64,000 nt of DNA from Paramoeba atlantica. Lineage: Eukaryota; Protista; Discosea. Every line of letters begins with the position of its first letter. Position 1 is the stretch's first letter. The position numbers and the translations under genes were made by a program. The notes below the pieces were generated by a model. The model worked only from the letters and a program-made list of their open reading frames with translations, was not told the origin of the DNA and did no database searches. The DNA is taken from positions 310,001-374,000 of the forward strand of contig CDRNVI010000014.1 in NCBI GenBank assembly GCA_977017575.1, in the 5' to 3' direction. This document shows positions 6,027-26,690 of the stretch, piece by piece.

Positions 6027-6085
<59 letters not shown>

Positions 6086-7100: not shown

Positions 7101-7289
7101 CATGGGATGAGTATCAAAGTAAGGGTTCGACATACGTCCCGCGGAATAACAAACGACAGCGTGATCCGGAGGAGTGCAGCGAAGATGTTGATCCTTCAGG
7201 AAAGCGATAGACGATTAACGGATAAATCGTCAGAAAGATCAACAAATTTGTATTAGATTTATGATTGAGGTATTAGAATAGGATACATG

Positions 7290-8110: not shown

Positions 8111-9087
8111 AAGTAAGTAGTACAGTAGTCGACAAGTCAGCACTGGAGATTCTGCAGTTACCCAGTGTGATCTTGTGTACGCTGTGTTACCCAGTACAAC
8201 CTGTGCTACCCAGTGTTACCCACAGAAGGCTTTTGCAAGGTCACTGGTGGTGACCCCCTCTGCAATGGCAGGGGTGGCCGACAAGCCAACCTGGAGGTTG
8301 GTGCCAGGCGGTCGAAAATAGTGGGACCGGTGTAGGTCTTTTTTGAGATAGTCAAAAGTATAAGTGAACAATGAAACGAAAAAGGTTTAGCATTCATCGA
8401 TATCCGTGGCTAAATTGACAATGTAGTCCTCAACCTGGGTTAGTACAACTCTATTTTCTGGCGTGCCATTACGTCGCCTCTTTTGGGATGCGCGACAGCC
8501 AGGTTTGGGATATCTTGAAGATTGGGCTTTATGTAAAGCAATTTCTCTTTTAAATTAAAAGCTGTCAGGAGATCCACAACATTGTTCAAGCTTGAAATGT
8601 TCAGGCAAAAGTTTTTCCGACATTCGATGTCGTGGCCTTCGTTCTGGTGTAGGAATGGTGCAATTTGAAATTCTCTGCTCTACGGGGGTTGGTTGCGGAG
8701 CTCCTATTGCAATGCGAAGAGACGTGCGTTCTTCGCTCCGCTCCGAGACACTCAGACCCGCGGCTGATGAAGTTCCTGTTGGAGACTCATTCTCCTCCGT
8801 TGGCTGTGAATTCGTCTGTGTGTGTCCGTGTCTGCTTACGCGAAATCGCTTTCCCATAAAGCAAAAAGAGAAATGAAAGTCAGGAAAGAATGTAATCAGA
8901 TGAAACACTATATTAAATTTTACTAGTTTCGTTTGGTAAGTACATATAAATATTTTTTTGCTGTACACCTGTTACGAAACGGGTTACCAAAAAAGTGTGT
9001 AAGTGGCTAACTTACACGTGTGCGTACACACATACACGCGGAAGGTGTGTTTAATGGCCTTGAAACCAGAGGTCCCTAAAACTATTA

Positions 9088-9416
9088 CTGTACCCCCCAC
9101 TGTTTATAATAGCCTCGCCCCCCCCCCCTTTATAGGTTCTATTTTTGGCAAACCGGGGAAGATTTTTTTTTGATTTTCTTGCACCGTCTTAAACTTTTTG
9201 ATATTTTCTCATAGTTCTGCGAGGTATGGCGCGGGGTGGTGCTGGATATTTTACTTTGGCAGATCGCCGGGGACCACTTAGCGATTGAATAATTCCTGGA
9301 TCCTCGCTCCAAAATGTAGGACGATTTCTGTGCCAACTTTAATCTTCCATCGCCCTCCCCCCTTTATGGGTTCATTTGGGCAAAATCGAGGCTATTATAA
9401 ACGGGGGGGGGTACAG
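9088..9416. mobile_element. MITE, 329 bp, TA-flanked
   Basis: TIRs CTGTACCCCCC...ATAATAGCCTCG; a sister copy spans 36792-39051 (interrupted). Confidence 0.85.
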
Positions 9417-9451
9417 TAATAGTTTATAGTGTTTCAAGAAAAATTATGGTA

Positions 9452-9634
9452 CTGTCCCCCCCCTTTATGCGCACCCGGTCAGCCCCCCCCCCCCCGTTTA
9501 AGCGCACATAGAGTTGAAGGAAGGATCCCGGCGCCGCGAAGCGGCGCCAATTTTTTTTTTATGTAGTGATTCAGACCCCCCCGTTTAAGCGCACTTTTCG
9601 CGGAAAACGAGGTGCGCTTAAACGGGGGGGACAG
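9452..9634. mobile_element. MITE, about 180 bp
   Basis: CTGTCCCCCC...GGGGGGACAG ends; reverse-orientation sister at 54328-54500. Confidence 0.8.
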
Positions 9635-10375
9635 CACTATAAACTTCGTTTATAGTACTATAAACACTACCCCTGTGTATACAGGGTGGATCAGCTAATG
9701 CTAACTAAATTATATTATGTTTCTCAGTGTTTCATGCCCAGGAAGGCACGCGGTAGACAGATCGGTGGGTGGACCCGGAGAAATTTCGCGGGGCAGGAGA
9801 GAGCCGATGGAGGTGTAGAGGCCTAGAAGGGTCATGAGATGTCAGGTGGTATGATGAGGGGTGTGGCACGTCGTGCGGCAAGTGGTGTGGATACGCCTTG
9901 CGCGGAGGAAAAACTCGCAACTTTTTCCCAAAATGCTCTTTCCTTGTGCCGCGCAAACAGCATTACATTCGCAGAGAGGAGGACGTTCCGTCATGAGGGA
10001 AAGCGCGCAGTGCGACAGGCGACGCCCTGGGCTTACTGTATTAAGGGCCCGAGGCGCATATCCTTCTGGAGAGGCCAGGCGGAAAAGGAGAAAAGCCGGA
10101 AGGCGGAGCACCAGTAGTCCACTGCAGGAAGGGGTTAAGCTTCCTGGCGTCTTCCTGGCGGGGGCGTTCGGCCGGGAGTGACCGGCTGCACAGGAGGTGC
10201 GAGTAGGCGGCCCCTACTCGAACGAAAAAGAGGGACAGCTTCAGCGGCGAAGGCGGGTCCCGGAAACGGGCATGTTTGAGTAAAGTATACATACCCGTTT
10301 CCGGGGAGAAAGAAGAGCTAGTAAAAAGTACCAACAAGGTACAGGAACTGTATCTTTGAGATAACGCAATCTGAG

Positions 10376-10800
10376 ATAAGTTTAGTAGATTATCATCAAC
10401 TTTTCCTATTCTTTTTTACCCTAAATGGATTGCCCGGGCTGCTCTGATTTTTCATGTACCGATAAGTAGTCTTATACCTTGCTTTGTTTGGCAACGGAAG
10501 ACAGCATCATATCGTGGATACAAAATCATGCTCTTATGTATCAGGCTGTTACTTATTCCAAAGGTCATGAGCCGCGGGTATGTGATCTTAAGGAAGAACA
10601 TTGGTTGTGTTCCGATCGTAGAAGGTGCCGCGGCAAAACATATTTTTTGGAACCTCTTCTGACGGCCGCACATGGGCGCACCGCGAATCAGCTTTTTAAA
10701 GTTTTATACGGCATCGCTTCCGGAAATAGCCGGTTACAGATCTCAACGGAGAGTGGACTTGGGCCAAAAGCGATCACTCGACTCACAAACACGCTAGAAT
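10376..10800 (+). mobile_element. Merlin/IS1595-like transposase N-terminal zinc-ribbon relic
   Basis: KGHEPRVCDLKEEHWLCSDRRRCR; second copy at 51337-51745 (CSKGHE...WLCSDRKCR). Confidence 0.5.
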
Positions 10801-11053
10801 TTTATTGCGGTGGTTGTATAATTACCGCTCTACCCTCGATTATTGAAAAAAAAGTGAACAAAAACAGTGAAAATATAAAGAGGAACACAGTAATCAAGGA
10901 AAATTATAATCAAGGAAAAAAGGAGCTTGGGACCTATACTAGCTTTTTCCGCAGTTGTTTTCGCAAGATACCCCTCCTTCGAGCCGTGGGGCGCCACTTA
11001 AAATGACCCATTTTTGACTAAAAGAGGTGAAAAAGTATTTTTCGGACCCCAAA

Positions 11054-11610
11054 GGGCCTTTTCGTGTCGAAAAAATGGTGTCGTTGGAGTTGCATTCTCT
11101 ACCCAATACGTTCGATAGACTTTCATTCATGTCTACGAGTGATTTCCCACGCGCAAATGTCGGATTTAGTGCTCTGAGAGCAAAAATACCCAAAAAATGA
11201 CCCGATTTTTACCCAAAACAAACGGCTATTTTTGGCCATAATCATTCTGTTTTCTTCAGCTTTACAGGCCAAATATATTTTTTAGGCTCTTCGTTAAACG
11301 CGGTGGTTGTTTTCAACTTAGAAGTCACTCATGCTGCGCGCTTCGCGTTGAAAACTGGCACCGCGTTTAACGAAGAGCCTAAAAAATATATTTGGCCTGG
11401 AAAGCTGAAGAAAACAGAATGATTATGGCCAAAAATAGCCGTTTGTTTTGGGTAAAAATCGGGTCATTTTTTGGGTATTTTTGCTCTCAGAGCACTAAAT
11501 CCGACATTTGCGCGTGGGAAATCACTCGTAGGCATGAATGAAAGTCTATCGAACGTATTGGGTAGAGAATGCGACTCCAACGACACCATTCTTTCGACAC
11601 AAAAAAGCCC
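11054..11610. repeat. Foldback: near-perfect 252-bp inverted arms with a 53-bp spacer
   Basis: 11054-11305 is the reverse complement of 11359-11610 with few mismatches. Confidence 0.95.
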
Positions 11611-11949
11611 ATTTGAATACGGACGGTAGGGACAAATATTTGACAAAAAATTGATTTTTTTCGTAAATGATTCAAAAGTCCTTTTAAATGTTTTTATGGC
11701 ATTTGCAGGTTCATACAGCCATTTTAAGCGTTTAAAAGAGACATCACCGCCCGCCCAGCTACCGTCACCCATCCCAGCCACGATCCCCCATCCAGCCACC
11801 CGCTCAGCCCCTCGAACCAAATCTCGCTTACTGGGGCCCAATCTCTCTTACGGGACTTACGGTAATAGTGGGCGGTCTAATACTCCGAGAAATTCGACCA
11901 GTCAGCTATCCACGAGGAAGAACAATGGTTAGTGATCCATACAGCTGCT

Positions 11950-12135
11950 CCGAACCCACACAGACCCTCCGAATAGGTCTGAGGTCTGGGGGACCGACTC
12001 GGACCCCCCCGCATGGAACCAACTCCCGTACCCGATGTGGTCGTTAAACAACGTTAAACACGTCGGCAGAAACTGGTAGAGCCGTTCGGACCTCGCACCC
12101 CCAAACGTCTGTGAAGGGCCTGGCGTGTCACCCTT
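11950..12135 (+). mobile_element. Diverged relative of the SINE-like body at 33008 and 45690
   Basis: Shares GACCG...GGACCC, GAAACTGGTAGAG, CGG.CCTCG and TGTGAAGGG.CTGGC in the same order. Confidence 0.55.
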
Positions 12136-12655
12136 GAAGGAGGGTGGCAACTTCCCAAAGGGGCAACATCCTGAGGGAGCCAGCGGCCAGCCGGGGGGAC
12201 CCGGTGCCCTTCATTCACTCAGAAACGCATTTGCCGTCCTGCGATAGTCATCTGCGTTTGTCAGGTAAGAAAATGTTGATTTCATGTGGTGATTTCATGT
12301 GTGGTTTCAACACGTCTCGAAGAAGGGGTATCTTGCGAAAACAACGGTGGGGAAAGCTAGTATAGGCAAAAATTCCGAAATTTTTGGGATAACCCCCTAA
12401 AAAAATTGACCAAAAAAAGTAAGAATATTTCTTTTTCAATTCTCATCGATTCTTAAAACGTATTTTGAGTTTGCGACCTGAGCTACCATTCTGTGATGTC
12501 TTTCTCGACAGATTCGCCTCCTACCCTTCTACGACTCCTACTGGTAAGGCGTCACAAATGGCCCAAATTTGGGGCACAATTTCACAATTTTCCCCGAAAA
12601 ATCGAGCTTTCTCATCCAAAAAATAGATTATTCATGATCTTTTGGCGATTTTTCG

Positions 12656-12761
12656 TTTTTAGGCTCTTCGTTAAACGCGGAGGTAGTTTTCAACGCGAAG
12701 CGATAGCAGTGGTGCCTTCTAAGTTGAAAACAACCACCGTGTTTAACGAAGAACATAAAAA
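12656..12761. repeat. About 105-bp hairpin element identical in type to the centre of the 11054-11610 foldback
   Basis: TTTTTAGGCTCTTCGTTAAACGCGG..GTTTTCAAC-spacer-GTTGAAAAC..CCGTGTTTAACGAAG, opposite orientation to the first copy. Confidence 0.9.
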
Positions 12762-13276
12762 GGTTAAATAAGAAAGTAAAGATAAATGGCACCAAATAAG
12801 GCAAAGAGTGGGTGGCACTAAAAAAAACAACTACCATCACAAGTATTATTAGTACTGTGCCTGTGGGGGTTTATTCTTTCATTTGTTATTCTTTCAGCTG
12901 TTATTCAACTTTTCATTCAAGCGACGTGTTTTAACTAAGTTTTTTACTTTAACTAATTCTACTTTACCTACGTGCAATCATCCTAGCGGCTGAGTTATTG
13001 AACCCTTTCAAACGATGTCAAAAAAAACCTACACGAACCTACACGTGCCTACACAGCTCGTCACGGACCAACACGAACTTACACATCCCTACTGCATACT
13101 CTCCATTGTCTTCGAAAATTCCTGTTTAAGAGTCCTAATGTCCAGAATCGGCCAACTGTTCTTAAGACTTCAGAAAGGCTGGGCAGAACGAAGGCTTCTA
13201 GGTACGAATCTAAAGCGAAGCTTAATTTGTTTTACGAGGGCCTAGCGGGAAATTCATAGGAAAATCGTTCCCTCTA

Positions 13277-14167
13277 TTAGAGGGTCAACGCAGAATTTTG
13301 AAATAGAGGTCTGGGGCGTTCGCAGAAACAAGTAAAACAAGGAGGCGCCAGTGTGGAATTTGGGAGCCCAATCGAATATGATGGAAGATGGAGGTGTGAA
13401 AATATAGTGCAGGGAGTTTGATGTGTGCCACAGTTCTCAGGCGAACCAGAGCAGCGAATGTCACCTCCATACGTTATATCACCTACAATGGGGTGGCCTA
13501 AGTACGAGGAAAGGTGAAGTCGGATTTGATGTCGTCGACCAGTGTGTAGACGAATTTTGACAAATGAAACCTCAATATCCGCAAATTTGTCATTCCTCTC
13601 TGCGTCTTCACCCATGATCAATACAGGTTTCGTTTCTAGAGTATCTAGGAGGGTTAACAATTCACACGAGACGGTAACAGGAAGTACGGCTCGAGATACG
13701 CGTATGAGTTCCGTGTGAGCGTCGCGCGCTTGGGAGCCATTGAGTTTCATAGCAAAATCGGTTGGATCAGTTTCATCATATCCAATAGGACAATGGATGT
13801 GGAATGGCACAAACGCTGTTTCCTCTGTGCTTCGTTGTCCATTCTCCATGAGGTTACGCTTCTTTGCTAGTGTGCGTAACAGATTTCCGAAAACAATTGC
13901 TTCATACTCCTTCTGTACCTCTCGCATCTCAAAGCAGTGGATCAGACGGGCCGCCATGGGCCGCGTCAGGGCGACTAAGAGAACTCCGCTGGTGGCGGCA
14001 TCCAGCTGATGGACCCAACGAACACCTTTGGGGTTTGCTGGGTCAGAGGACGCGTTTAACGCGATGCACGTCGATGCCCAGTGTTTCACCGTAACCATGT
14101 GGTCATTGTTTAATTTCAGCTGCAAAGACAAATCCGTTTCTACGAAAAACGATTGCGCAAACTGCAT
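13277..14167 (-). pseudogene. 5'-truncated RluA/RPUSD1-like pseudouridine synthase fused to the TOP2 3' flank
   Basis: HQLDAATSG and GRRHQIRLH are present; motif I (LVLHKP) is missing. The first ~20 codons derive from TOP2 downstream sequence. Confidence 0.8.
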
Positions 14168-17100
14168 TCAAAGATCAAGAGCCTTTCCTAATCTTCCGTT
14201 CCAAGGAATGAACGCACGAAATTTTGCCGTCGCAAGCGACTTCACGTTCGCAAATTCTTGCATGTCCAAACTAATACGTGTCCCGTTGGGACGAAGCTTC
14301 GGGTGCTGGGCGGGAATCTTAGTACGCTCAGCACACTCCTCCATATGCAATCGCAACGCAACTTCTAACTCCTCGAGGTCCGAAAGCCAGAAGTCCTTTG
14401 GGAGAGACTGTCTCATCACATTAACTCGTTCCCGCAGTATGGCCACATTTTCAGCCAGGGCGCTTCGTCGTTCAGAACACAACGACACGACCGTCATCCC
14501 CAAAAGATATTCGTAGGACCCGTCCACCGGATCTCTCGGGATCTTAAGCTCCATAAGTGCTTTTACAATATCTGCACCGTTACCTGAGATGTTTATCTTT
14601 CCATCCAAGATGCTTCGCAGAAACACATGCCTTCCTTCCGCGACACTCAGCTGGTTCTCCGCCTTCTGCACCTCCGACTTCTTCCGCAGCTCATAAAAGT
14701 GCATCCGCATCTCACAGAAATTCTTCAATACTTCCATCGCATTCCCCAGCTGATATATCCTCCGTGGCTTCTCCTGCACAATAAACCGCGACTTCCGGCT
14801 TCGTCCCACCAGCGACAGCAAATGGTACAGCACATTAAACCGAATCCCCATCGAAATCACCTGCGGGGCGAGCTCAATTTCAAAATCCACTGCATCCACC
14901 GTGTGGTGCTCCTGGTAGCTTCGTATCACTCCTTTCTCCACCATGCCATCTAATCTCACCTTATAATCCGAAGTCCACATCCAGGCCGGGAGCTCCGTCA
15001 CCCGCACCGTGCAGCCATTAATCAGCGAGACCCGCCCGGTGGTGTAGTATCTGCCGCTCTTCCCCAGGCAGTGGACCTTCCCTTTGAATCCGGTCACCCA
15101 GGGCTTCAAGTCCCCAGTCATCTCCTTGCCGGATTTCAGCCAGGACCGGATCAGCTCGATCAGCACCAGCGGGTCGTGCCCGGGAATCGAAGTGGAGAAG
15201 CCGGTGCCAATCCCGTGGGAGCCGTTCACTAAGAGGGTCGGGATCACGGGGACGTAGAACTGGGGCTGCACGGTGAGGGCCTCATCGACCTCGTGTGTGA
15301 GATTGGGCTCGTCCTCGGCACGAAACAGCAGATGGGTGATGGCACTGAGTCGGATGTGGAGGTCCTGTGGGTCGGCGACATCGACCCCTCCCTCGAGACG
15401 GGTCCCGAATTGACCCTCCCCGAGGAGAAGGGGGACGTTGTTGGAACCGACAAAATTTTGGGCCATGGCGATCGCGGTGGATTGGAGGCTAACGTCCCCG
15501 TGGTGGTAGGCGGTGTGTTCGGCAATGTACCCGCAGAACTGGACGACCTTGATGGGGTCCCGGAGGTTACGTTTGAGCGCGGCGAAGAGAATTTTGCGTT
15601 GGGTTATTTTTAGGCCATCCATGAGATGAGGGATCGATCGCGCACAGTCCTCGATGGAGTAGCGAATCATTTGGCGGTGGACAAACTGGTGGTAAGACAT
15701 GCTTCGAACAGAGAAGTCCATTTTGTTGTCTTGGGTCACAATTTTCAGTCCTTCTTTGATCCATGTTCGTCGCTCAGCGGCTTGTGTATGCGATTTGCCA
15801 AACGGAAGCGCGAGGACGTTTTCGTCGGTGACAGGGTCGTATACGAAGGAAATCGTGTGCGCGTCCATTTTCCTAAAGTACTCCTTTGCTTCGGCCGAGG
15901 TATTTGTTCCCAATCCCTTATAGTACTTGTATCGGTATAACGGCTTCGGGTTCATCTCTTCCAACTCCTGGGTAAATTTAGTGTAACTCCCCATAGAATA
16001 AAACGAGCGGACTTCTCCCCTTGGCCCGAATGCCTTTACCAGCGGAGTGACGAATTGCGCAAGAAATCCCGGGCGTTGAAACAACTGTGGAGCAACGACT
16101 TGGATCAAGTTGGCAATGAGACCTTTAATGTGGTCACCACCTAGATCTTGATCTGCCATGATTAGCAACTTTCCATACCGAAGTCCGTTGGAATTCTGTT
16201 GCACAACCAGTCGATTTGAGAGGCCTTTGGTTGTTTTCAGATAAAGTCCCAGAATCGCTAATAGATTGCGCACCTCTGTGCACCTTGCAATGCTTGAAAC
16301 GGATGCAGATCGGACATTCATCAAAACTCCTCGTATGGGATATATACCGTGGTAGTCGCGACCTAACACGCTCAAGCCTGCTACGGCAAACGCCTTCGCG
16401 CTGTCACCCTCCGTGATGATCAAAGTACATTCGTTGGATTTTATCGTCCCCGCGTGAACAGCGTCCTCCAACTTCGGTATCAATAAAGTGCTTGTCCTTG
16501 ACACAACAGTGGTTTGGTGCTTCTTCATAATTCTGCTGTAACGATTCTCAGTTGCTACAAGGACGCGATCCACGATATCTGTCTCGGCCAGAAACCTGGA
16601 AATGAGATTTTCGAGTTCCGGAAGCGAACCACACTTTTGTGTTCGGGAGCGTAATGTGGTTTTTGTTTGCGAATCGAAATGAGGGTTTTCTATCTTGCAG
16701 TTCAGAAAGAGGGAGATGTTTTGTCTCACGAGGTCTTTCGTTTGCACAACCTGTGGTATCTTTTCCTGCACGTGAGATATCACTGCAGTACTCAAGGCGT
16801 CCATCACGTAGTTCACATGGGTCCCCCCGCGAGTAGTGTTGATGCAATTAACAAAGCTCGTCTGGTTGTAGCCCTCGTCACTGGTACACACAAGAACGTC
16901 CCAACGGTATGAAGACTGGGCCACAGATGGATGTGTTCGTGCTCCCGGGTAGAGGGCGCAGTACTCCTTAAAGTTGTGTACCTTGATCTGGGTGGCGTTG
17001 AGATATATGGTTGTATTGGACCCAATAACTCCAGCGAGATCCACAACACGACGACACATGAGTTCGTACATGTCATCCGTTAGGTTATCCATCTCGAATC

Positions 17101-17755
17101 TAGCGTAATCAGGGAGAAAAGAAATTTTCGTATAACCTGAGTCTCCTCCCTCTCGCACCTCTGGAGCTGAAGCAACCATCATGTGATCTTGCCACTTCAT
17201 GGAGAAGAACTGCTTCGTCGGTTCGTAATTTGTATCAACAGAAAATTCCTTAGAAAAGATATTTGTTAGCTTTGCGCCGTATCCATATCTCCCACCCGTG
17301 ATTCTTTTCTTTGATTCATCGTAGTTGGAGGAGGTCAATACGTGGCCAAAAATCATTTCTGGAATCCATAATTTGTATTTTCGATGTTTCACGACTGGGA
17401 TACCAATGCCGTCATTCTCTACGCTTATTGCACCTGTTTGTCGATCGATCTCAACTTTTACATATGTTTGTTTGGCGCCTTCACGGGTCTTGTTGTCTGC
17501 TGCGTTAACAATTATCTCGTCAAAGATCTTGTACAAGCCTGGGGAATACTTTAGCTCCTTTCGCTCCATTGTATTACCTGTCTCGTCGTAAACCCAGCAT
17601 AACTCTTTGGAACATGAGGTATTTCCGATGTACATATCAGGTCTGGCTAAAACGTGTTCTCGTGGTGTAAGCTTCTCATACACGTCGTCAGGATGCTTAA
17701 CGGTTCGCAGATGCAAACAAATGCGAAACAAATTGGGCTTCAAAGAGCGCAGCAT
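14168..17755 (-). CDS. TOP2: Topoisomerase II paralog, full-length (1195 aa) but lacking catalytic residues
   Basis: Colinear with 1117-4704, no stops or frameshifts. APRYI is replaced by DPQDL, DQDLDG by DQDLGG, PIRGKP by PIRGVL. Confidence 0.93.
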   Translation of the reverse strand: MLRSLKPNLFRICLHLRTVKHPDDVYEKLTPREHVLARPDMYIGNTSCSKELCWVYDETGNTMERKELKYSPGLYKIFDEIIVNAADNKTREGAKQTYVKVEIDRQTGAISVENDGIGIPVVKHRKYKLWIPEMIFGHVLTSSNYDESKKRITGGRYGYGAKLTNIFSKEFSVDTNYEPTKQFFSMKWQDHMMVASAPEVREGGDSGYTKISFLPDYARFEMDNLTDDMYELMCRRVVDLAGVIGSNTTIYLNATQIKVHNFKEYCALYPGARTHPSVAQSSYRWDVLVCTSDEGYNQTSFVNCINTTRGGTHVNYVMDALSTAVISHVQEKIPQVVQTKDLVRQNISLFLNCKIENPHFDSQTKTTLRSRTQKCGSLPELENLISRFLAETDIVDRVLVATENRYSRIMKKHQTTVVSRTSTLLIPKLEDAVHAGTIKSNECTLIITEGDSAKAFAVAGLSVLGRDYHGIYPIRGVLMNVRSASVSSIARCTEVRNLLAILGLYLKTTKGLSNRLVVQQNSNGLRYGKLLIMADQDLGGDHIKGLIANLIQVVAPQLFQRPGFLAQFVTPLVKAFGPRGEVRSFYSMGSYTKFTQELEEMNPKPLYRYKYYKGLGTNTSAEAKEYFRKMDAHTISFVYDPVTDENVLALPFGKSHTQAAERRTWIKEGLKIVTQDNKMDFSVRSMSYHQFVHRQMIRYSIEDCARSIPHLMDGLKITQRKILFAALKRNLRDPIKVVQFCGYIAEHTAYHHGDVSLQSTAIAMAQNFVGSNNVPLLLGEGQFGTRLEGGVDVADPQDLHIRLSAITHLLFRAEDEPNLTHEVDEALTVQPQFYVPVIPTLLVNGSHGIGTGFSTSIPGHDPLVLIELIRSWLKSGKEMTGDLKPWVTGFKGKVHCLGKSGRYYTTGRVSLINGCTVRVTELPAWMWTSDYKVRLDGMVEKGVIRSYQEHHTVDAVDFEIELAPQVISMGIRFNVLYHLLSLVGRSRKSRFIVQEKPRRIYQLGNAMEVLKNFCEMRMHFYELRKKSEVQKAENQLSVAEGRHVFLRSILDGKINISGNGADIVKALMELKIPRDPVDGSYEYLLGMTVVSLCSERRSALAENVAILRERVNVMRQSLPKDFWLSDLEELEVALRLHMEECAERTKIPAQHPKLRPNGTRISLDMQEFANVKSLATAKFRAFIPWNGRLGKALDL

Positions 17756-18764
17756 GATAAAGGACTGACTGGTAAAGTATTCTAAGAAACGATTTGAAGT
17801 ACAGTACACACAACTATTAGTGTATCATTTTTTCATAAGACAAAAAGGACATCGTCACTCACCTAGACTCAATCTGTACCCAAAAATACGTTTTTTCAAA
17901 AAAAAAAGTGCCCCCTTCGACCAAATTTCAATTCAAAGTCGTTTTGAGCACCATAAAACAATAATTCCCGAAATGTGAAAGATTGGAAGCCATTTAAAGT
18001 CACTAGAAAATTCTTTAGAATTATTGTTCTGTATTGGTATAAAGGGGCTGTGGGTACATCTTCTATAAGGCTAGGTCTGACATGTAAAGTATAAAGGAGA
18101 AATCAACAAGCGAAGTATCGATTGAAAGTGCACAGAGTTACTGAAATAGTATCTTTATCCCAAGGAGGAATCCTTTCAACCCAAATGGGGTGATGCAAGC
18201 TGAAGATATGCGTCTACGAAACAAAAATATCTTTAAGGAGTAAGTAATGGGGTGGTATAAAATGAGGACATGCGTCTACGAACTAAAACAAGCCCAAAGA
18301 GAAGCAAAAAAATTGTAGATAATTCACACAGCGTAGTGTATAGTGGGTTAAGCACTGGTATGCAAAAAAATGTTCACATGTTTGACGCTTTCTTGTTATT
18401 GGTGTTTACCTGTAGCCAGGTGTCGCGTTCATTGAAGTAGTATATCAGAGTAGTGTATACGTGGGTACTGTGTATACGTGGGTACTGTGTATGTTGCCAT
18501 AGAGCTTACAACTTGAACGGCTTTGTAATAAAAATATGATCGCGTACAAGTGAGGGGCTGCGCGTGAAACCTCGCGAAACCTCGGTGAAACCTCGCGAAA
18601 CTCCGTTAAAAATCTCTCAAAGCCATGCTCAAGTGTTTGTCGTACAACAACTCAAAAAGCAAATTAAATAAAATAGAAATACAGCAATAATCAGTGCTGG
18701 ATAAATTCATTTTAACGTCTACCTTGTATTGTACGAACCACAGATTGATAAACTACACGTATTA

Positions 18765-19064
18765 CTCCTCCTCTGATTAATTTTGATAATATAATAATTT
18801 TTTTTTAATTTTTATCCCCCATTATTTTGATAATATATTGTTTCAATATATTTCGTTCTCTAGAACAGCAAAGTCACAAATTTTTCAGTTCGAACACCCA
18901 AAATGCCCCAAATCTGGGGTAAAAAGTTGCCTTTTTCGCCTAGAAATCGGGTATTTTCGCCCGAAAGCTGTTTTCGGTTCTTATTAATTTTGATAAATGA
19001 TAATGATAATAATAAGTCAATTATATTTATCATTTATCACTATCAAAATTAATCAGAGGGGGAG
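18765..19064. mobile_element. MITE, 300 bp, TA-flanked
   Basis: CTCCTCCTCTGATTAATTTTGATA...TATCAAAATTAATCAGAGGGGGAG ends. Confidence 0.8.
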
Positions 19065-19315
19065 TACCACTTTCTGAAAGATATTTCTAACCGTTTACCT
19101 TAAAACTGCTTTCTGAATTTTAAATCTTTCCACCTGCTTGGGGCAGACCCTAAAGTGAGCCTAAAAAATCGTACTGCTATACCCCCCAGTTTATGAGTTC
19201 CCCGTTTTTGAGAACATCCCCAGTCGTGGAACAAGAGGAAGTGAAACAAGTGGTGTAGGGGATTTGTGGCACAAACCGGGTATCCAACAAAAGACCCAGT
19301 AACTGGATGATTCAA

Positions 19316-20374
19316 TTAGCTAATCAATGTTTCAAGTGATAGTGGAGACTGAAATCTAGTCTTTTGCTCAAAAGGTGGAGTACTTTGCAAGTCTTTTCTT
19401 CCCCTTGGACTCAAGCCTTTCCGGTATCTTCTAATAATTCTCCTGCGTTCGGCCTTCTCCCGTCTCTCCCGGAGAGGAGTGCGAGGCGCCAGCGTGGAAT
19501 TTGGGAGCCCAATCGAATGTGATAGAAGATGGAGGTGTGAAAATATAGTGCAGGGAGTTTGATGTGTGCCACAGTTCTCAGGCGAACCAGGGCAGCGAAT
19601 GTCACCTCCATACGTTATATCACCTACAATGGGGTGGCCTAAGTACGAGGAAAGGTGAAGTCGGATTTGATGTCGTCGACCAGTGTGTAGACGAATTTTG
19701 ACAAATGAAACCTCAATATCCGCAAATTTGTCATTCCTCTCTGCGTCTTCACCCATGATCAATACAGGTTTCGTTTCTAGAGTATCTAGGAGGGTTAACA
19801 ATTCACACGAGACGGTAACAGGAAGTACGGCTCGAGATACGCGTATGAGTTCCGTGTGAGCGTCGCGCGGTTGGGAGCCATTGAGCTTCATAGCAAAATC
19901 GGTTGGATCAGTTTCATCATATCCAATAGGACAATGGATGTGGAATGGCACAAACGCTGTTTCCTCCGTGCTCCGTTGTCCATTCTCCATGAGGTTACGC
20001 TTCTTTGCTAGTGTGCGTAACAGATTTCCGAAAACAATTGCTTCATACTCCTTCTGTACCTCTCGCATCTCAAAGCAGTGGATCAGACGGGCCGCCATGG
20101 GCCGCGTCAGGGCGACTAAGAGAACTCCGCTGGTGGCGGCATCCAGCTGATGGACCCAACGAACACCTTTGGGGTTTGCTGGGTCAGAGGACGCGTTTAA
20201 CTCGATGTACGTCGATGCCCAGTGTTTCACTGTAGCTGTGTGCTCCGCTCCGTCCATGGCAACGTCAAAGGGCTTATGCAGGACCAAAAGTTCTTCGGAT
20301 TCGTACAAAACAAGAAAATCATTTGAGTGTTGCAACGAGGTCGTTGTATGTATTGGTCTCACAGAATGCGTCAT
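19316..20374 (-). CDS. RluA-family (RPUSD1-like) pseudouridine synthase
   Basis: LVLHKP, HQLDAATSG (catalytic Asp), KEYEA, GRRHQIRLH, HPIVGD. The C-terminus diverges abruptly from the 13277 copy near 19490. Confidence 0.88.
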   Translation of the reverse strand: MTHSVRPIHTTTSLQHSNDFLVLYESEELLVLHKPFDVAMDGAEHTATVKHWASTYIELNASSDPANPKGVRWVHQLDAATSGVLLVALTRPMAARLIHCFEMREVQKEYEAIVFGNLLRTLAKKRNLMENGQRSTEETAFVPFHIHCPIGYDETDPTDFAMKLNGSQPRDAHTELIRVSRAVLPVTVSCELLTLLDTLETKPVLIMGEDAERNDKFADIEVSFVKIRLHTGRRHQIRLHLSSYLGHPIVGDITYGGDIRCPGSPENCGTHQTPCTIFSHLHLLSHSIGLPNSTLAPRTPLRERREKAERRRIIRRYRKGLSPRGRKDLQSTPPFEQKTRFQSPLSLETLIS

Positions 20375-21175
20375 GAAGCATATTGCAGAAATACCAAATT
20401 AGCAAATGTGTGAAGTAAAATAGACAGCGAATAATATGGACTCGATTATTTTTGGTGATTAACGTTTTGTCTTTTGCAGCGCTGTCGGAAAATAAACCAG
20501 GAAAATAAAGCGGGAGAGGGAGATACCAATAACACAGATGCGGCAGCTTCCCACAGGAAATACGGTATATCGTACTTTATATACTATATAAATATAAACT
20601 ATTATATAGTATATAGTATACAGGTGTATAGTACTATGCGGGTGTATAGTACTATACCCCCCCTACTTATTTGTCACTTTTCTCGAAAAAGGCATGACAA
20701 ATAAGTAGGGGGGTCGGGCGTGTGACAAATAACTAGGGGGGGTGGCGTTCATTGGGTGACAAACAACTATGGGAGGTAGGTGTTGTCAGACCCACATCAG
20801 GAGCCTCCCCAGAAATGAGCGTGAAAGATACTCGTCTTTGAGGCATGAATGATGAAAACAGGAGAAGCCCCAAAAATAGTAGAAAAAATTGCGAAAATGC
20901 AAGTCGAAAAAACGTTTTCGTTAGAAGGAACTCAGAATGTACCCTAAAATCATTCTTTTGGAGTCGAAACACCGTGTCTTCGATGCGTAGAAACCAAGAA
21001 AAAAACAGTGTTTCTGGAAGCTCGAAGATGGATCTAAGTGCCGGCTAAAAATTCCGGAATTCGGGCCGTTGTTCCTCTTCAAATGCCGAATTGTGGATAA
21101 ATTCCGAAGTTGGTTACTTATTGCACAAGGAAATTTACCATGTAATATCGCGTTGCAAGCACAACTTTCTGGTCC

Positions 21176-21540
21176 CATTGCCGTCCTGATTGGATGAACT
21201 GTTGAGTTCATGCCAGGGACATCGAGATATGGATTTGATCTTGGACGTGCTCTTTCGAGACACCTCTCCTTGGTTCCATTGCCGTCCTGATTGGATGAAC
21301 TGTTGAGTTCATGCCAGGGACATCGAGATATGGATTTGATCTTGGACGTGCTCTTTCGAGACACCTCTCCTTGGTTCCATTGCCGTCCTGATTGGATGAA
21401 CTGTTGAGTTCATGCCAGGGACATCGAGATATGGATTTGATCTTGGATGTGCTCTTTCGAGACACCTCTCCTTGGTTTTCATTGCCGTCCTGATTGGATG
21501 AACTGTTGAGTTCATGCCATGAATACCGCGATTCATTTGC
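21176..21540. repeat. Tandem array of a 101-102 bp unit (3 units plus a partial) ending in a unique 31-bp cap
   Basis: Units start at 21206, 21307 and 21408; cap GTTCATGCCATGAATACCGCGATTCATTTGC at 21510-21540. Confidence 0.97.
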
Positions 21541-21541
21541 A

Positions 21542-21564
21542 GATACAGTTTCTGTACCTTGTTG
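21542..21564 (+). other. 3' part of a kinetoplastid spliced leader (mini-exon)
   Basis: GATACAGTTTCTGTACCTTGTTG versus the known kinetoplastid SL 3' half GATACAGTTTCTGTACTATATTG; not followed by the GT of an SL intron. Confidence 0.75.
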
Positions 21565-21640
21565 AATTATTTTAATTTTTCTACTTGGTACTAACTGTAT
21601 GAAACCTCCATGACAACCAGAACCGCCACACAGGAGGAAA

Positions 21641-24600
21641 TTGCAACACCAGGCCTTCCTCAAGGACCCGGCGTTGCGCGGAAACAGTCTTTGCATTTCA
21701 TCCAGAGCCGGGCACGACCCGTCAGTAGTCAGTAGTCATAGTATGCTTTGGAACTACTACCCCGACATAAAGTCCGCTTGTCTTAGTCACCTCGTGAGAC
21801 AACGCATCGCTTCACAACAAGGTGCTGAAGCTGCACTTAGTAAGGCCCTCAACGGCAAGGGAACACCACATGATTTGGTAATAGAGGCAGCTACACTCGA
21901 GGAACTAATACATCACCATGCCTGCGACTACATTGAAATTAGCAGAAACTCGCACCCATCGGAAAAGTACTACCACGCCAGCTGGACTTCCCTATTCAAT
22001 GACCCCCACCTTAGCATCAGCGACTCGTACTCCAGCCCGAACGCCCTAGGCAAAGCAGTCCTGAAGTCCGTGAGCGGGGCTAAAGTACCGGGGCTTGAAA
22101 AGTTTACCATCAAAATTACCCGAAACACAAACTCCAACACCGAAATTACACCATACCAACCGGCACAAAGAGTAGAGGGCACACCTTTCCAAATTGCGAA
22201 GCCACGTTCTACGAAACCCAACGAACCACAGACCGTGGAACCTCTCAAAGGACCCTGCAGACACAAATGCTCTAGCAAGCTAACGTGCCTGCACAAGTGT
22301 TGCAAAATATTTGGACCTACCCACAATCAAGAACCTGCAAGCACCTCTACCCTTGACACAACGAATTTGAACTCGACCACCGGCAGAACGCTAAAATGGG
22401 ACTTGAGAAGCTCGACTCGCGAACTTGGTCACTCCCCGAAGGCCACAGACATGCCCACTAGAAGTCGGCGAAACCCGCAGTCAAGAGCAGAGAAAGCGGC
22501 AACATCACAGTACAAAGGCCCAGTGAACGACCTGCCCACCTCGAATCCAGTGCCTGACATGAATGATGACGATACAACCTTTCTGGAAAAGGTCGGAGTG
22601 CTGGCAGGATGGGCAACTAGTAGGGTCTCTGAACTCTGTGATGCTTTCGCAACTGGTAGAAAAGCAGGGGCCCCTGTCAACGAGGCAGTACAGAAAAGCG
22701 AGAGATCGATGCAGTCAGGATACGACCCCACACAGGACCCCGAGCGTGACTGGCAGTACCGCAGCACTATGAAGCACTACGAAGCAAAGCACATATCTAG
22801 GAAGAATGACGTCAAAGAAGCCCCCAAAAGCGCGAGTTTACAGCCAGATCAAAGCACGAATCACGCAGCGCGACCCAGTACGACTTGTGTTACATTTGGG
22901 TACCCAGGCGCGGGGGGAAAAGGACCCTGCAAGCACACATGCCGAGAAAAGCTCTCATGCGCCCACCGATGCTGCAAGACATACGGGCCTCTCTCTTAAC
23001 TGCAATCTTCCACGCATGCAAGAAATACCACGAATATCTCCGGAGAAGCAACGAATCATTGCCCGGCACCGAACCGCGACGATCCCTTACACAAGAAAAG
23101 GCATGAACTACTTCAACAACACAACGACATTCAAGGTGGGAAACTCTGCGTCAAACTAAACGATGATCAATGGCGTTCAGTAGAAAAGCGAGCCCTAGGG
23201 AGATGCAAGGAGCTCCTACACAAAGACGCCACAAACGCGTTCCTAGCAAAGGAGAACGGTGCTATACTCGCCGCGTCTATCGCTGTATCAACCTTTGAGG
23301 TGAGTCAAGAGGTGAATCCCACCAAAGGGTTCGTTCTTCGCACAAAACAAGGACATTCCAAATTTAAATATAGACCTTTAGCCATAGAAAAAGTGAACCG
23401 AGAACTATCCAAGCATATACAACGACTGAAACGATCCCTTAGATTCACCCATGGCACGGAAGCCCGAAATACCTTACGCCGCCAAATCAAAGAAAACAAG
23501 AAGCTAGAAAGAATCTACGCAGACAAGGCCGACGTGCAACGCCGAGCGTTAGAAGGTAGATGGGCGCATGAACGTTTCTCAAGAAACCCATGGACTGCGG
23601 CTGCTGAAGCCATGGACAGACCCAGTGAGGATGAAGTCACAAACACGCAATACCCAAGCTGTACAATGCTCGAAATAGAGGAACATTTCAGTCAAACCCT
23701 AACGAAAGAGCGCGACACTCTCCGGCTCCCTAACTTCGATATACTAGGCCCTAGAGCCACCAACGAAATGACGTGGATACCAGTAACAGCCGAAACAATC
23801 GCCAATGCCATCTCAAGCAAACGGGGCTCTAGTTCACCAGGGCAAGATACAATCACAAACGCAGCGCTAAAACGATGCCCAGCACTATACAGCTCCCTGG
23901 CCAAAATGTTTAATGACTTAATAAAATTCGGGACATGCCCCACGTCGTGGTCTCTAGCGATCACGCGTCTTATCCACAAAGGTGGAGACCCTAAAATACC
24001 TAGGAACTGGCGGCCCATAGCACTCACAAGCTGTCTGGGAAAACTTCTTCACAGCATCATAGGACACCAACTCCTGGACCATGCTGTAAGCTCAGGAGTC
24101 ATTGATACGACTATCCAAAAGGGGTTTCTACCACGGATGAATGGAACTCTGGAACACACCCAAACACTGTGTAACCTGCTGCAACATCATCAGCGCAAGA
24201 AGAATCAGTACTGTCTGGCCCAGATCGACCTCAGAAACGCATTCGGTTCGCTTTCCCACGACATCATATTCGAAGCTCTCTCCTGGGCGCGCGTGTCACC
24301 CGAAATCATTGAATACATCAAAGGCATGTATCTCTCAGCCACTACGAGATTCAAATGCGGCCAAGGACTAACCAAGGAAATCGCAGTGCAACGTGGCGTA
24401 CTACAAGGTGATACTCTATCCCCAGTGCTCTTCAATATTGCGATGGAGATCGTCCTCCGCTACATGCGTCGCACATGCCCGTACTATGGCATATCCTACC
24501 CCGATACACCAAAGCACTTCCTAAAGGCTTATGTTGATGACCTTACGATAATTACGTCAAGTGATTTCGACATGAACAATGCAATACAATCACTCTCTAT

Positions 24601-26065
24601 CGTCCTTAGACGCATTGGATTGTCTATCAACGTCGAAAAAAGTAGGGTACAATGTATGGCCATGCGAGCGGGAACGGAACATCCAGGATATATGACGAGG
24701 CGGCCAAAGATTGAATGTGACGGAGATCCGATTCCCCACATTTGCGACAGAGGTAGTGCCTTCCTGGGAATGACACTGGCCCCTGGAGCACAACAAGCCA
24801 GAGAGCTATATAAAAAGTTGAACGCGAAACTTAAGACTTGGTTACAAAATGTGCACCGAAGCGCACATACGCTACCTGAAAAACTATGGATCTATCAAAA
24901 TGTTATGCTCGCTCGCCTACGATATGCTTTCACGGTCCATCCTTGCATAACGTTCAACTTTATACTTCGACTCCAGAAGACGGCAACCTCCTACATTAGG
25001 AAATGGATCAACATGGCCTCTAAAGGTAGCACAGAAGTCCTGTACTCAGATCGCGGTTGGGGCCTAACAGCACTCTCTAAGCTTTGGTTCGAATGCACTG
25101 CCACCGCGATGACTCAAATGAATAAATCCAGAGACATCAATGTCCAAGCAGCGCTACGTTCCCGCATTGAAGAGGAGCAAAACAGGCGAGCTAGAGGGCA
25201 ACTACGACCAGCATGCGAAATCCTACAACACCTAAACGACGCAAAACGCGCCAAAAAAATCATGCGGGAATATTACGAAGCGAAAATTGTACAAGACCTT
25301 CAGAAACGAGCACCGGTCGCAGCCAAATGGTGGACAACACCTTCCGAAACTGAACTTGCGAAGGAGTTTTCCGCCGTACTGAACAACCTGAACAGCACGA
25401 AGCTAACACGTTTTGCGACCTCGGTTCTACTTACCACTCCTTTACCCTCAAAGTCAAACCTTCGGACATGGGGCCTTCACTTCTCAAATGCTACATGTGT
25501 GGTATGCGGAAAAGAAGCACAGACGGTACGACACGTTATTTCAGGTTGCAAAACATCTCTTGATCAGGGGCGTTATACCCTCAGACACGACACAGTGCTA
25601 GCTGAACTGGCCAAACGCATCCAAGAATCCCCGCATACAAAATACCAGCATTTTGACCTACTAGGTCACCGAAATCCACCACACTGGCTGCACAACAATA
25701 CAAATCATCAACGCCCAGGCGGATTCGTTGCACTGACTGACGGTACAGAATTCATCGTTGAGCTCACTGTCCCCTGGGAAGAAAACTGTATGCAGGCAAA
25801 TGAATATAAACGCCTCAAGTACAACGCCCTATTACACGAACGACGAACAGTGCACCCGAACACGTACCTCCTCGTATTCGAAATTGGAGCACGAGGTGGT
25901 CTGGTAGCCTCCTCAGCGGATATTAATCGGTTGTTTGGAGGGGACGAAGATTTGGGGGCTAAATGTCGGGCGTCACTCTCCCGAGCTGCTATCCGTTCCA
26001 GCTCCTTATTATGGCATAAGCGTGATTCCCCGCAATGGAGCGATGCAGAGACACTGTCCGCATAA
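21641..26065 (+). pseudogene. Single long retrotransposon ORF split by one in-frame TAA (22997-22999)
   Basis: ORFs 21641-22999 and 23300-26065 are in the same frame and 23000-23299 has no further stop. The endonuclease PD motif reads PG (25715-25720). Confidence 0.85.
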
Positions 26066-26150
26066 GGGATGCACCTAACAGCGTCATATGCGCAAGTTAG
26101 TTACATCCTTAAAATACTCTATCTTAAAAGATATGATATCATCATCATCA

Positions 26151-26690
26151 GTTCATGCCAGGGACATCGAGATATGGATTTGATCTTGGACGTGCTCTTT
26201 CGAGACACCTCTCCTTGGTTTCCATTGCCGTCCTGATTGGATGAACTGTTGAGTTCATGCCAGGGACATCGAGATATGGATTTGATCTTGGACGTGCTCT
26301 TTCGAGACACCTCTCCTTGGTTTCCATTGCCGTCCTGATTGGATGAACTGTTGAGTTCATGCCAGGGACATCGAGATATGTATTTAATCTTGGATGTGCT
26401 CTTTCGAGACACCTCTCCTTGGTTTCATTGCCGTCCTGATTGGATGAACTGTTGAGTTCATGCCAGGGACATCGAGATATGGATTTGATCTTGGACGTGC
26501 TCTTTCGAGACACCTCTCCTTGGTTTCCATTGCCGTCCTGATTGGATGAACTGTTGAGTTCATGCCAGGGACATCGAGATATGGATTTGATCTTGGATGT
26601 GCTCTTTCGAGACACCTCTCCTTGGTTTCCATTGCCGTCCTGATTGGATGAACTGTTGAGTTCATGCCATGAATACCGCGATTCATTTGC
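26151..26690. repeat. Second copy of the 101-102 bp array (5 units) with the same 31-bp cap
   Basis: Units at 26151, 26253, 26355, 26456 and 26558; cap at 26660-26690. Confidence 0.97.

What the first reader, a model, noticed from the sequence alone, without database searches (positions are those of the whole stretch)
21542..21610. Non-LTR element whose 5' end is a spliced-leader fragment
The element begins with 23 nt matching the 3' half of the kinetoplastid SL, joined directly to element UTR with no SL intron on either side. SLACS/CZAR/CRE and NeSL insert into SL RNA genes (established). Here the pattern instead fits reverse transcription of a trans-spliced element mRNA into the leader, meaning the element relies on host trans-splicing to define its 5' end (inference). 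It is also not CRE-clade-like by motif.
Basis: partly seen in the sequence, partly recalled or inferred. Interest (0 to 1): 0.75.

Follow-up and report, generated by a model that had tools for sequence, protein, structure and literature searches.

The report
Retrotransposon headed by spliced-leader fragment
A dead copy of a jumping gene in a trypanosome-like protist begins with the last 24 letters of the cell's own messenger-RNA leader, so it was copied back from leader-bearing RNA; hundreds of elements in this genome do the same, and how the leader is kept from one generation to the next is still open.

Summary
Observation confirmed. Window 21541-21564 equals nt 15-38 of this genome's own 38-nt spliced leader (SL). 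I defined the SL from 38 SL RNA gene copies that lie in arrays with 5S rRNA genes. The match ends exactly at the exon's last base and runs straight into a 45-nt 5'UTR. There is no SL promoter and no SL intron.

The element is a 4.6-kb R2-like LINE: one ORF with reverse transcriptase, a CCHC knuckle and a restriction-like endonuclease, and an (ATC)n tail. The window copy is dead. It carries a frameshift, a premature stop and a D-to-G change in the nuclease motif. It sits between two copies of a 102-bp array, which I read as an unusually long target duplication.

Three sister copies at unrelated loci share the same SL/UTR junction, and about 38 heads of related families share the same design. 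So the leader arrived on RNA, not by insertion into an SL gene.

The junction is TG|AA, with no AG acceptor, so trans-splicing cannot remake it from such copies. The element is not unlike CRE either: it belongs to the same endonuclease superclade.

This scan has already reported SL-headed retroelements many times elsewhere in this genome. New here: one SL gene whose promoter and exon are fused directly to a young LINE, and misreading of SL base 2 in the copies.

The parts
21170..21540 (.). Left copy of the duplicated target: a partial unit, three 101/102-bp units and a 32-nt terminal piece
   Evidence: The array occurs only here and, at 85% identity, at one other locus, so it is target DNA and not part of the element.
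21541..21564 (+). DNA copy of spliced-leader exon nt 15-38, which is the 5' end of the element in this copy
   Evidence: Identical to the SL exon of the SL RNA genes. Sister copies carry nt 11-38.
21565..21609 (+). 45-nt 5'UTR with no AG. It contains the motif GTACTAAC (21588-21595), which is conserved in the heads of related families
21610..26065 (+). Remains of the single element ORF (1489 codons uninterrupted in one sister copy). Broken here by a frameshift near 21723 and a TAA stop at 22997-22999
23984..24655 (+). Reverse transcriptase domain
   Evidence: Pfam RVT_1, E 1e-28. R2 proteins are the best solved relatives.
25496..25825 (+). CCHC knuckle and restriction-like endonuclease motifs (RHD, RPD, ELT, K). 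The Asp of RPD is Gly in this copy only (codon 25718-25720)
   Evidence: Alignment with relatives, a profile match reaching the C-terminal end of R2 proteins, and comparison of copies.
26066..26149 (+). 3'UTR ending in an (ATC)n tail, with no poly(A)
   Evidence: The same end occurs in about 15 copies with different downstream flanks.
26150..26690 (.). Right copy of the duplicated target: five 101/102-bp units and the same 32-nt terminal piece
   Evidence: The element's 3' junction falls exactly on a unit boundary.

Best explanation
What it is (shown). This is a decayed copy of a young, low-copy family of R2-like non-LTR retrotransposons. The family has a single ORF with RT, a CCHC knuckle and a restriction-like endonuclease, and an (ATC)n tail. 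Its first bases are a DNA fossil of the host spliced leader: nt 15-38 in this copy, nt 11-38 in its sisters. The fossil is fused at the exact exon end to a 45-nt 5'UTR. The copy inserted by target-primed reverse transcription into a 102-bp tandem array, and at least 371 bp of target were duplicated.

How the leader got there (inferred). An ancestral element RNA carried the SL exon at its 5' end, most simply because it was trans-spliced, and that RNA was reverse transcribed.

What I think holds today (inferred, about 40%). In this clade the piece SL nt 11-38 has become a fixed, inherited 5' module. It is shared by several related LINE families and by a roughly 580-nt SINE-like partner, much as Pr77 is shared by L1Tc, ingi and their non-autonomous partners. 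The module passes DNA to RNA to DNA. It is not re-added by trans-splicing each round, because the junction has no AG acceptor. What sets the RNA's 5' end at nt 11 is unknown; it could be a promoter, a processing site, or a stop specific to this reverse transcriptase. In the window copy four more bases were lost at the 5' junction.
For: - The SL is defined from real genes, and the window shows an exact 24-nt match that ends at the exon end.
- Four full-length copies at unrelated loci are 98.9-99.3% identical. Almost all their differences are private (33, 25, 23 and 18 private against 4 shared), and all share the same SL/UTR junction.
- The element has R2-like architecture to its C-terminal end.
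- There are 38 heads of related families with the layout SL, a T-rich spacer, then GTACTAAC. Their N-terminal ORFs are homologous.
- Heads of the W-like LINEs and the SINE-like 'GTAC' family start at SL nt 10-15, with a mode at 11. In 61 of 66 heads of other families the start is at nt 1-8.
- The relic is unchanged between GTAC subfamilies whose adjoining sequence has diverged.
- No AG precedes the UTR in any copy, and no SL-less copy exists.
- The array is target DNA, not element DNA.
Against: - Of about 147 GTAC-family heads, 9 extend to SL nt 8 or further (about 2.3 expected by chance) and 2 extend to nt 5 or further. So at least some template RNAs carried more of the leader than nt 11-38. 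That fits a full SL on the RNA followed by a preferred stop.
- In other LINE families, SL base 2 reads T, C or G instead of A, and it varies between copies of one subfamily. There the leader is copied afresh from modified RNA each round, so renewal does occur in this genome.
- No promoter or ribozyme was found in the head.
- The 5' junctions of two sister copies overlap AT-rich flanks by 2-3 nt. For this family the start is therefore nt 11-15 rather than a sharp nt 11.
- No RNA data were available.
Confidence: 0.5

Rival explanations
1. SL-gene master. The active source copies sit directly behind the SL exon inside SL RNA genes and are transcribed from the SL promoter, as R2 is co-transcribed with 28S rRNA. 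Their RNA therefore starts with a genuine capped SL without any trans-splicing. The dispersed copies, like this one, are dead-end progeny whose cDNA usually stops near nt 11.
For: - One such arrangement exists for another LINE family. At G000:C41:280831 (L143), 340 nt of SL-gene upstream sequence (99% identical to the SL repeat) and the full exon run straight into a LINE family that has at least 14 copies at 99-100% identity.
- This needs no AG at the junction.
- It explains the misreading of SL base 2 in progeny and the star-like copy tree.
- SL arrays lie at contig ends, so copies embedded in them may be unassembled.
- Elements with a restriction-like endonuclease are known to live in SL genes (PMC12278014, PMC5814959).
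Against: - None of the 35 promoter-bearing SL genes in the assembly is followed by this family or a related one, and all five copies with this UTR are elsewhere.
- The family's insertion sites show no clear resemblance to the SL exon end.
- The C41 fusion could be a by-product of homology-guided integration of an SL-headed cDNA.
Confidence: 0.25
2. In every generation an element transcript is trans-spliced by the host at an acceptor just before the UTR. That defines its 5' end, and the spliced mRNA is the template for new copies.
For: - The junction falls at the exact exon end.
- Nested relics follow the SL's internal AGs: 14 after nt 22 and 2 after nt 16.
- Unrelated families have similar A/T-rich UTR starts after the SL, as a common acceptor context would give.
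- A GTAC-family head has a new SL in front of a relic cut at AG22 (C37:314227).
Against: - All copies have TG, not AG, before the UTR.
- No SL-less source copy exists in the assembly.
- Re-splicing at the relic's own AGs would give tandem relics, and no copy of this family has them.
- Heads of this clade start at nt 11-15, not at the cap end.
Confidence: 0.15
3. Leader capture during reverse transcription. The reverse transcriptase reaches the 5' end of an unspliced element RNA and jumps onto the 3' end of a free SL exon (the intermediate of trans-splicing) or of another SL-bearing RNA. This would resemble the way U6/L1 chimeras form.
For: - It gives an exact exon-end junction without an AG.
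- Related families show the SL attached at several points of a homologous UTR. Spacers ATCTTTT and TCTTTT are suffixes of a longer spacer, and the preceding bases in the sister families are not AG.
- A repeated TACCTTGTTG relic occurs 41 times without an AG before it, which points to slippage or jumping.
- End-to-end template jumping by R2 enzymes is established knowledge (from memory).
Against: - The spacer series can also arise from small deletions in a T-rich tract.
- The junction is constant within the family.
- No untemplated bases are seen at the junction.
- There is no direct test.
Confidence: 0.08
4. The SL piece is target DNA: a remnant of a degenerate SL gene, or of an SL relic into which the element inserted.
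For: In the C23 sister copy the element's tail abuts the SL head of a GTAC-family element, and SL-like bases (AACTTTGA) precede its own head. So insertion into an existing relic can happen.
Against: - The bases left of the SL piece in the window are the array's terminal piece. That same piece recurs to the right of the element next to unique DNA, so the empty site had no SL.
- The flanks do not match the SL repeat.
- The C63 copy interrupts an LRR-type coding repeat cleanly and brings its SL piece with it.
Confidence: 0.02

Closest known systems
R2-type non-LTR retrotransposons with a restriction-like endonuclease (R2Bm and vertebrate R2; solved structures 8gh6, 9nl3, 9dou)
   Same: A single ORF. 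RT, linker, CCHC knuckle and C-terminal PD-(D/E)xK-type nuclease come in the same order. The profile match runs to the end of the R2 proteins, with E from 1e-104 to 1e-138. There is no poly(A) tail, and many copies are 5'-truncated.
   Different: It is not in 28S rDNA and has no clear site specificity. The N-terminal 760 residues match no Pfam domain. No HDV-like 5' ribozyme was detected. The 5' end is host SL sequence.
CRE clade (SLACS, CZAR, CRE1, CRE2) of trypanosomatids
   Same: Euglenozoan host, RT plus restriction-like endonuclease, a single ORF, and an association with SL sequence (PMC12278014). The clade's head starts at SL nt 10/11. Aligned on the conserved ACAGTTTCTGTAC core, that corresponds to the nt 11/12 insertion point of SLACS and CZAR (PMC5814959; the alignment is my own, made from memory of the trypanosome SL).
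   Different: CRE elements sit inside SL genes with SL sequence on both sides and usually end in poly(A). This family is dispersed, carries the SL 3' part on its own 5' end, and ends in (ATC)n. No SL gene in the assembly is interrupted at nt 10/11. RT phylogeny was not done.
Dinoflagellate retrogenes with DinoSL relicts ('recycled cDNAs')
   Same: DNA copies of the spliced leader lie at the 5' end of retro-copied sequences. Some carry tandem relics cut at an AG inside the leader (PMC6050394).
   Different: Here the carriers are mostly autonomous and non-autonomous retrotransposons. In this clade the leader piece is a constant truncated module, not a full leader.
Pr77 hallmark of L1Tc/ingi and their partners NARTc, RIME and SIDER
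   Same: A short 5' module shared by autonomous LINEs and non-autonomous partners in a host that has polycistronic transcription. Pr77 binds the SL-gene factors TBP and SNAP50 (PMC8190864, PMC5814959).
   Different: There is no sequence similarity. Pr77 transcripts lack an SL. No function of the SL-derived module has been shown.

Membership tests
Non-LTR retrotransposon with restriction-like endonuclease (R2 superclade) | Reverse transcriptase of the LINE type | tested here: met
   RVT_1, E 1e-28. R2 and L1 ORF2 proteins are the best solved matches.
Non-LTR retrotransposon with restriction-like endonuclease (R2 superclade) | CCHC knuckle and PD-(D/E)xK-type nuclease C-terminal to the RT, and no N-terminal AP endonuclease | tested here: met
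   The motifs C-x2-C-x7-H-x4-C, RHD, RPD, ELT and K are conserved in the relatives. The profile aligns to the last residues of R2 proteins. There is no Exo_endo_phos hit. The C-terminal piece alone gave no PDB hit.
Non-LTR retrotransposon with restriction-like endonuclease (R2 superclade) | Insertion by target-primed reverse transcription: defined 3' end, variable 5' truncation, variable target duplication | tested here: met
   About 15 copies share the 3' end but have different flanks and 5' truncation points. Target duplications range from 0 to about 9 bp, with one of at least 371 bp.
CRE clade (SLACS/CZAR/CRE1/CRE2) | Site-specific insertion inside SL RNA genes at a fixed exon position | tested here: not met
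   The window copy and its sisters lie in a satellite array, an LRR-type gene and other loci. None of the 38 SL gene copies is interrupted in the exon.
CRE clade (SLACS/CZAR/CRE1/CRE2) | Poly(A) 3' tail | tested here: not met
   The tail is (ATC)n. The poly(A) feature is taken from PMC12278014.
CRE clade (SLACS/CZAR/CRE1/CRE2) | RT groups with CRE references in a phylogeny | not tested
   Two word-index searches returned no named CRE, SLACS or CZAR protein, so no reference sequences were on hand.
R2 clade proper | Insertion at the conserved 28S rDNA site | tested here: not met
   All the flanks that I read are non-rDNA.
SL-relic retrocopies (dinoflagellate type) | Genomic leader sequence joined at the exon end to the downstream sequence, away from SL genes | tested here: met
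SL-relic retrocopies (dinoflagellate type) | Renewal by re-splicing at an AG inside the old leader, leaving tandem relics | tested here: not met
   This occurs genome-wide in 16 cases but in none of the five copies of this family.

The most novel reading that the evidence does not exclude
The 28-nt piece SL nt 11-38 is a working 5' module that a clade of R2-like LINEs and its SINE-like partner took from the host leader. It would let them recruit the SL-gene transcription machinery, fix their RNA 5' end or gain leader-dependent translation, as a counterpart of Pr77. A linked possibility is that the real source copies sit directly behind the exon in SL RNA genes and are fired by the SL promoter, as the C41 fusion of another family suggests.
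Probability: 0.3. Interest if true: 0.8.

Novelty: new variant of a known kind. Interest (0 to 1): 0.62.

Why it matters
In trypanosome-like cells, genes have no promoters of their own and every mRNA needs the spliced leader. How a jumping gene makes a full-length, translatable RNA there is a real problem. L1Tc and ingi solve it with the Pr77 module. SLACS and CZAR solve it by living in SL genes. This genome shows a third habit: hundreds of elements of several kinds carry the leader in their DNA. I found no report of this for Euglenozoa in the papers I could search.

The family studied here adds three points.
- In one R2-like clade the leader piece is a constant, truncated head shared with a non-autonomous partner.
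- The junction cannot be remade by ordinary trans-splicing.
- An SL gene fused to a young LINE exists, which gives a testable route for renewing the leader.

The copies also record misreading at leader base 2, a free readout of cap-proximal RNA modification.

Tried and rejected
- Chance match: rejected.
- Degenerate SL gene or SL-gene insertion: rejected. The flanks do not match the SL repeat and the empty site can be reconstructed.
- The 102-bp array as part of the element: rejected. It occurs only here and at one 85% relative.
- Long target duplications in the sister copies: none found.
- A shared target motif. TGTTG precedes two reconstructed sites and resembles the SL exon end, but other flanks do not show it, so I dropped it as weak.
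- An HDV-like or other known ribozyme or RNA family in the head of this family or of the GTAC family: no match at E up to 5.
- CRE-type interruptions of SL genes at nt 10/11: none.
- The GTAC family as a 3'-end partner of this LINE: its 3' end differs.
- Homology between the ORF1 region of this element and the poly(A)-type SL-headed LINEs: none. Those encode a weak LsmAD-like motif.
- Pfam on the N-terminal 760 residues: nothing.
- The nuclease domain alone against PDB: nothing. The profile search succeeded.
- Protein atlas: only generic RT clusters.
- Exact SL string in papers: none.
- SL 23-mer in prokaryote genome contigs: none.

Full report
**1. The observation**

The window reads ...catttgc|AGATACAGTTTCTGTACCTTGTTG|AATTATTTT... 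at 21534-21573. The 13-nt core ACAGTTTCTGTAC has one exact hit in the window against 0.04 expected. It has 811 hits in the 45.7-Mb assembly G000, against 0 and 2 for the reversed control. The window is G000:C14:310001-374000.

**2. The organism's true leader**

Of 185 places with the SL 3' end followed by GTA, 38 continue GTATGAG. Thirty-five places carry one and the same upstream sequence followed by the first ten exon bases. These are tandem units (for example 1454 bp at C3:780.7 kb and about 2.6 kb on C97 and C107) that also hold a 5S rRNA gene on the other strand.

The exon is AACTTTAACGATAAAGATACAGTTTCTGTACCTTGTTG, 38 nt, at L036:1479-1516. A JGI metagenome contig (L150) has the identical exon behind a different upstream region. 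In the intron hairpin it carries a compensatory double change (T.G to G-C), which fits a functional SL RNA.

The core motif, the GTATGAGAAGC donor and the SL-5S linkage are of kinetoplastid type. I did not identify the species. Window 21541-21564 is SL nt 15-38, exact to the last exon base.

**3. The element**

Downstream DNA searches found four full-length copies (the window, C46, C23, C63), an older rearranged one (C51) and about ten 5'-truncated ones. The full-length copies are 98.9-99.3% identical. Their differences are 33, 25, 23 and 18 private against only 4 shared, a star-like pattern.

The true ORF starts at the ATG at 21610. It runs uninterrupted for 1489 codons in one sister copy. 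The other two sisters each have one frameshifting indel.

The window copy has three private defects: a frameshift near 21723, a TAA stop at 22997, and Gly for the Asp of the RPD nuclease motif at 25718-25720. It is a dead copy.

The protein has RVT_1. A profile of the element and 16 relatives matches R2 proteins from their N-terminal extension to their last residues: E 3e-138 for 9nl3 and 2e-104 for R2Bm 8gh6. L1 ORF2 proteins match only through the RT. The motifs CCHC, RHD, RPD, ELT and K are conserved. The 3' end is ...GATATGATATC(ATC)n, without poly(A).

So this is an R2-like LINE with a restriction-like endonuclease. That is the superclade that also holds CRE, NeSL and R4.

**4. The insertion site**

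The 101/102-bp array flanks the element on both sides (21170-21519 and 26150-26669). Each copy is followed by the same terminal piece, ending ...tgaataccgcgattcatttgc. The array is found only here and at one 85%-identical locus, so it is target DNA, not element DNA.

The element's tail meets the array exactly at a unit boundary. The left copy has 3 full units and the right copy has 5, so the arrays have changed in length since the insertion. The simplest reading is a target duplication of at least 371 bp.

The sister copies have none of this. One of them interrupts an LRR-type coding repeat cleanly (...LSPTLSML | ILSENRFFG...) with a 2-nt overlap at the 5' junction. One short copy has a duplication of about 9 bp.

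Because the terminal piece to the left of the SL fragment recurs to the right next to unique DNA, the empty site held no SL sequence. The SL piece came in with the element.

**5. The family's 5' ends**

The C46 and C63 copies read flank|ATAAAGATACAG..., which is SL nt 11-38. AT-rich overlaps of 2-3 nt make the exact start nt 11-13. The C23 copy reads AACTTTGA+ATAAAG... and lies between two GTAC-family elements, with its tail abutting the SL head of the downstream one. The window copy starts at nt 15. The C51 copy keeps only the last 8 SL bases and a shortened UTR.

In all copies the SL is followed by the same UTR. The bases before the UTR are TG, not AG.

**6. The wider picture**

I read 87 distinct SL sites from the first 100 places. 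In 66 heads of 'other' families, 61 start at SL nt 1-8 and 20 follow an A-rich run directly. Several of these families are LINEs whose first ORF has a weak LsmAD-like motif.

At SL base 2 these copies read T 23 times, C 6 times, G once and A 14 times, although every SL gene has A there. The base differs between copies of one subfamily. I read this as reverse-transcriptase misreading of a modified cap-proximal base. In those families the leader is therefore copied afresh from mature RNA at each insertion.

Six retro-copies of the SL RNA itself (exon plus intron, A-rich tail, no promoter) show the same oddity.

Two groups start at nt 10-15 with a mode at 11. One is a roughly 580-nt structured, non-coding 'GTAC' family (SL|GTAC..., about 147 copies). 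The other is the group of LINE families related to the window element. Those families share the layout SL, a T-rich spacer, then GTACTAAC (38 heads with at least 8 spacer variants), and their ORF N-termini are homologous.

Nine GTAC heads reach nt 8 or further (2.3 expected by chance), and two reach nt 5 or further.

Tandem relics exist genome-wide. Fourteen restart right after the SL's AG at nt 22 and two after the AG at nt 16, as re-splicing of retro-copy transcripts predicts. Forty-one repeat TACCTTGTTG without any AG before it.

**7. How the leader got onto this element**

Shown: the leader is joined at the exon end and travels with the element. So an RNA with the SL exon fused to the UTR was reverse transcribed.

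Inferred: four routes could make or keep such an RNA.
- (a) The relic is now an inherited 5' module. It is conserved across related LINE families and their SINE-like partner, as Pr77 is in L1Tc/ingi and their partners. Something sets the RNA 5' end at its start.
- (b) Source copies sit behind the exon inside SL genes and are fired by the SL promoter.
- (c) An SL-less source copy is trans-spliced at an AG just before the UTR.
- (d) The enzyme jumps onto a free SL exon at the end of cDNA synthesis.

Route (c) lacks its source copy and its AG. Route (b) has a real example in another family. At C41:280831, 340 nt of SL-gene upstream sequence and the full exon run into a LINE that has at least 14 copies at 99-100% identity. 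No example exists for this family, but SL arrays lie at contig ends. Route (a) fits the constant truncated head and the shared module, but it does not explain the rare longer heads. Route (d) fits the spacer series, but nothing else requires it.

My odds are (a) 0.4, (b) 0.25, (c) 0.15, (d) 0.08. The claim that the piece is an RNA-borne SL fossil on an R2-like LINE I hold at about 0.9.

One coincidence is worth recording. Aligned on the conserved core, nt 10/11 of this 38-nt leader corresponds to nt 11/12 of the 39-nt trypanosome leader, which is the SLACS/CZAR insertion point (PMC5814959; the alignment is from my memory of that SL).

**8. Comparison and novelty**

The closest known cases are listed here.
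- R2-type elements: same architecture.
- The CRE clade: same host group and nuclease type, but those elements sit inside SL genes and end in poly(A) (PMC12278014).
- Dinoflagellate DinoSL-relict retrogenes: the same kind of fossil (PMC6050394).
- The Pr77 hallmark: a shared 5' module that binds SL-gene factors (PMC8190864).

I found no paper describing leader-headed retrotransposons in Euglenozoa. That is a limit of the library I could search, not proof of absence.

Earlier notes of this scan report the same habit many times elsewhere in this genome and left open how the leader is renewed. I tested the R2-like nature, the LRR target and the array duplication myself.

**9. Limits**

As a result I could not read the C41 fusion beyond 1 kb, the SL arrays with 7.3-kb spacing on C74, or the 5' ends of more distant relatives.

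Noticed in passing
L143 (G000:C41:280500-281500): An SL RNA gene unit whose exon is followed by the 5'UTR and ORF of a young LINE family instead of by its intron. The upstream 340 nt are 99% identical to the SL repeat, and the exon is complete. The LINE family has at least 14 copies at 99-100% identity and an ORF1 with an LsmAD-like motif. This is a candidate source copy driven by the SL promoter.
   Followed up: partly
Loci L005-L030 and L082-L140 (G000 contigs C1-C5): In leader-headed copies that reach the cap end, SL base 2 reads T (23), C (6) or G (1) instead of the genomic A (14), and it varies within subfamilies. This looks like reverse-transcriptase misreading of a modified cap-proximal base.
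   Followed up: partly
L144-L149 (G000 C6:27.1 kb, C11:274.2 kb, C24:3.4 kb, C83:133.0 kb, C87:74.4 and 106.9 kb): Six dispersed retro-copies of the whole SL RNA (exon plus intron). They have no promoter and end at the RNA's 3' end followed by an A-rich run.
   Followed up: partly
window 10332-10358 (-), body running down to about 10200: A second leader-headed element in the window: SL nt 13-38 with one mismatch, then GTAC... and a long hairpin. It is 73-76% identical to the roughly 580-nt non-coding GTAC family (about 147 copies genome-wide).
   Followed up: partly
window 21170-21540 and 26150-26690: The element is bracketed by two copies of a 102-bp array plus a 32-nt unique end piece. This is a target duplication of at least 371 bp, far longer than in the sister copies (0 to about 9 bp). 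Another reader noted it separately.
   Followed up: yes
genome-wide, e.g. G000:C1:65013, C14:509725, C27:63916: 83 tandem leader relics. Forty-one repeat the last 10 SL bases, 14 restart after the AG at SL nt 22, and 2 restart after the AG at nt 16.
   Followed up: partly
L150 (metagenome contig Ga0316204_10168667): An SL RNA gene unit from an environmental sample. Its 38-nt exon is identical, but its promoter region and intron details differ, so a relative of this organism exists in that sample.
   Followed up: no
window 6129-6160 (+), 18148-18160 (-), 52601-52613 (-), 58194-58205 (-): Decayed SL-like fragments (12-14 nt with one mismatch, with partial similarity beyond). They may be older relics.
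   Followed up: no
G000:C74:104-122 kb (coordinates only): SL genes spaced 2.7, 7.3 and 7.3 kb apart, so two units carry an extra stretch of about 4.6 kb. I could not read it.
   Followed up: no
window 1117-20374 (-) versus 21610-26065 and 37149-41974 (+): The element lies where the long ORFs change from the minus to the plus strand, possibly a divergent strand-switch region.
   Followed up: no
L141/L142 (G000:C11:3.4-7.3 kb): Paired SL genes 297 bp apart. The second copy of each pair has C for A at exon nt 30. About 90 nt downstream resemble, in reverse orientation, the 3' part of the GTAC family (83% identity).
   Followed up: no
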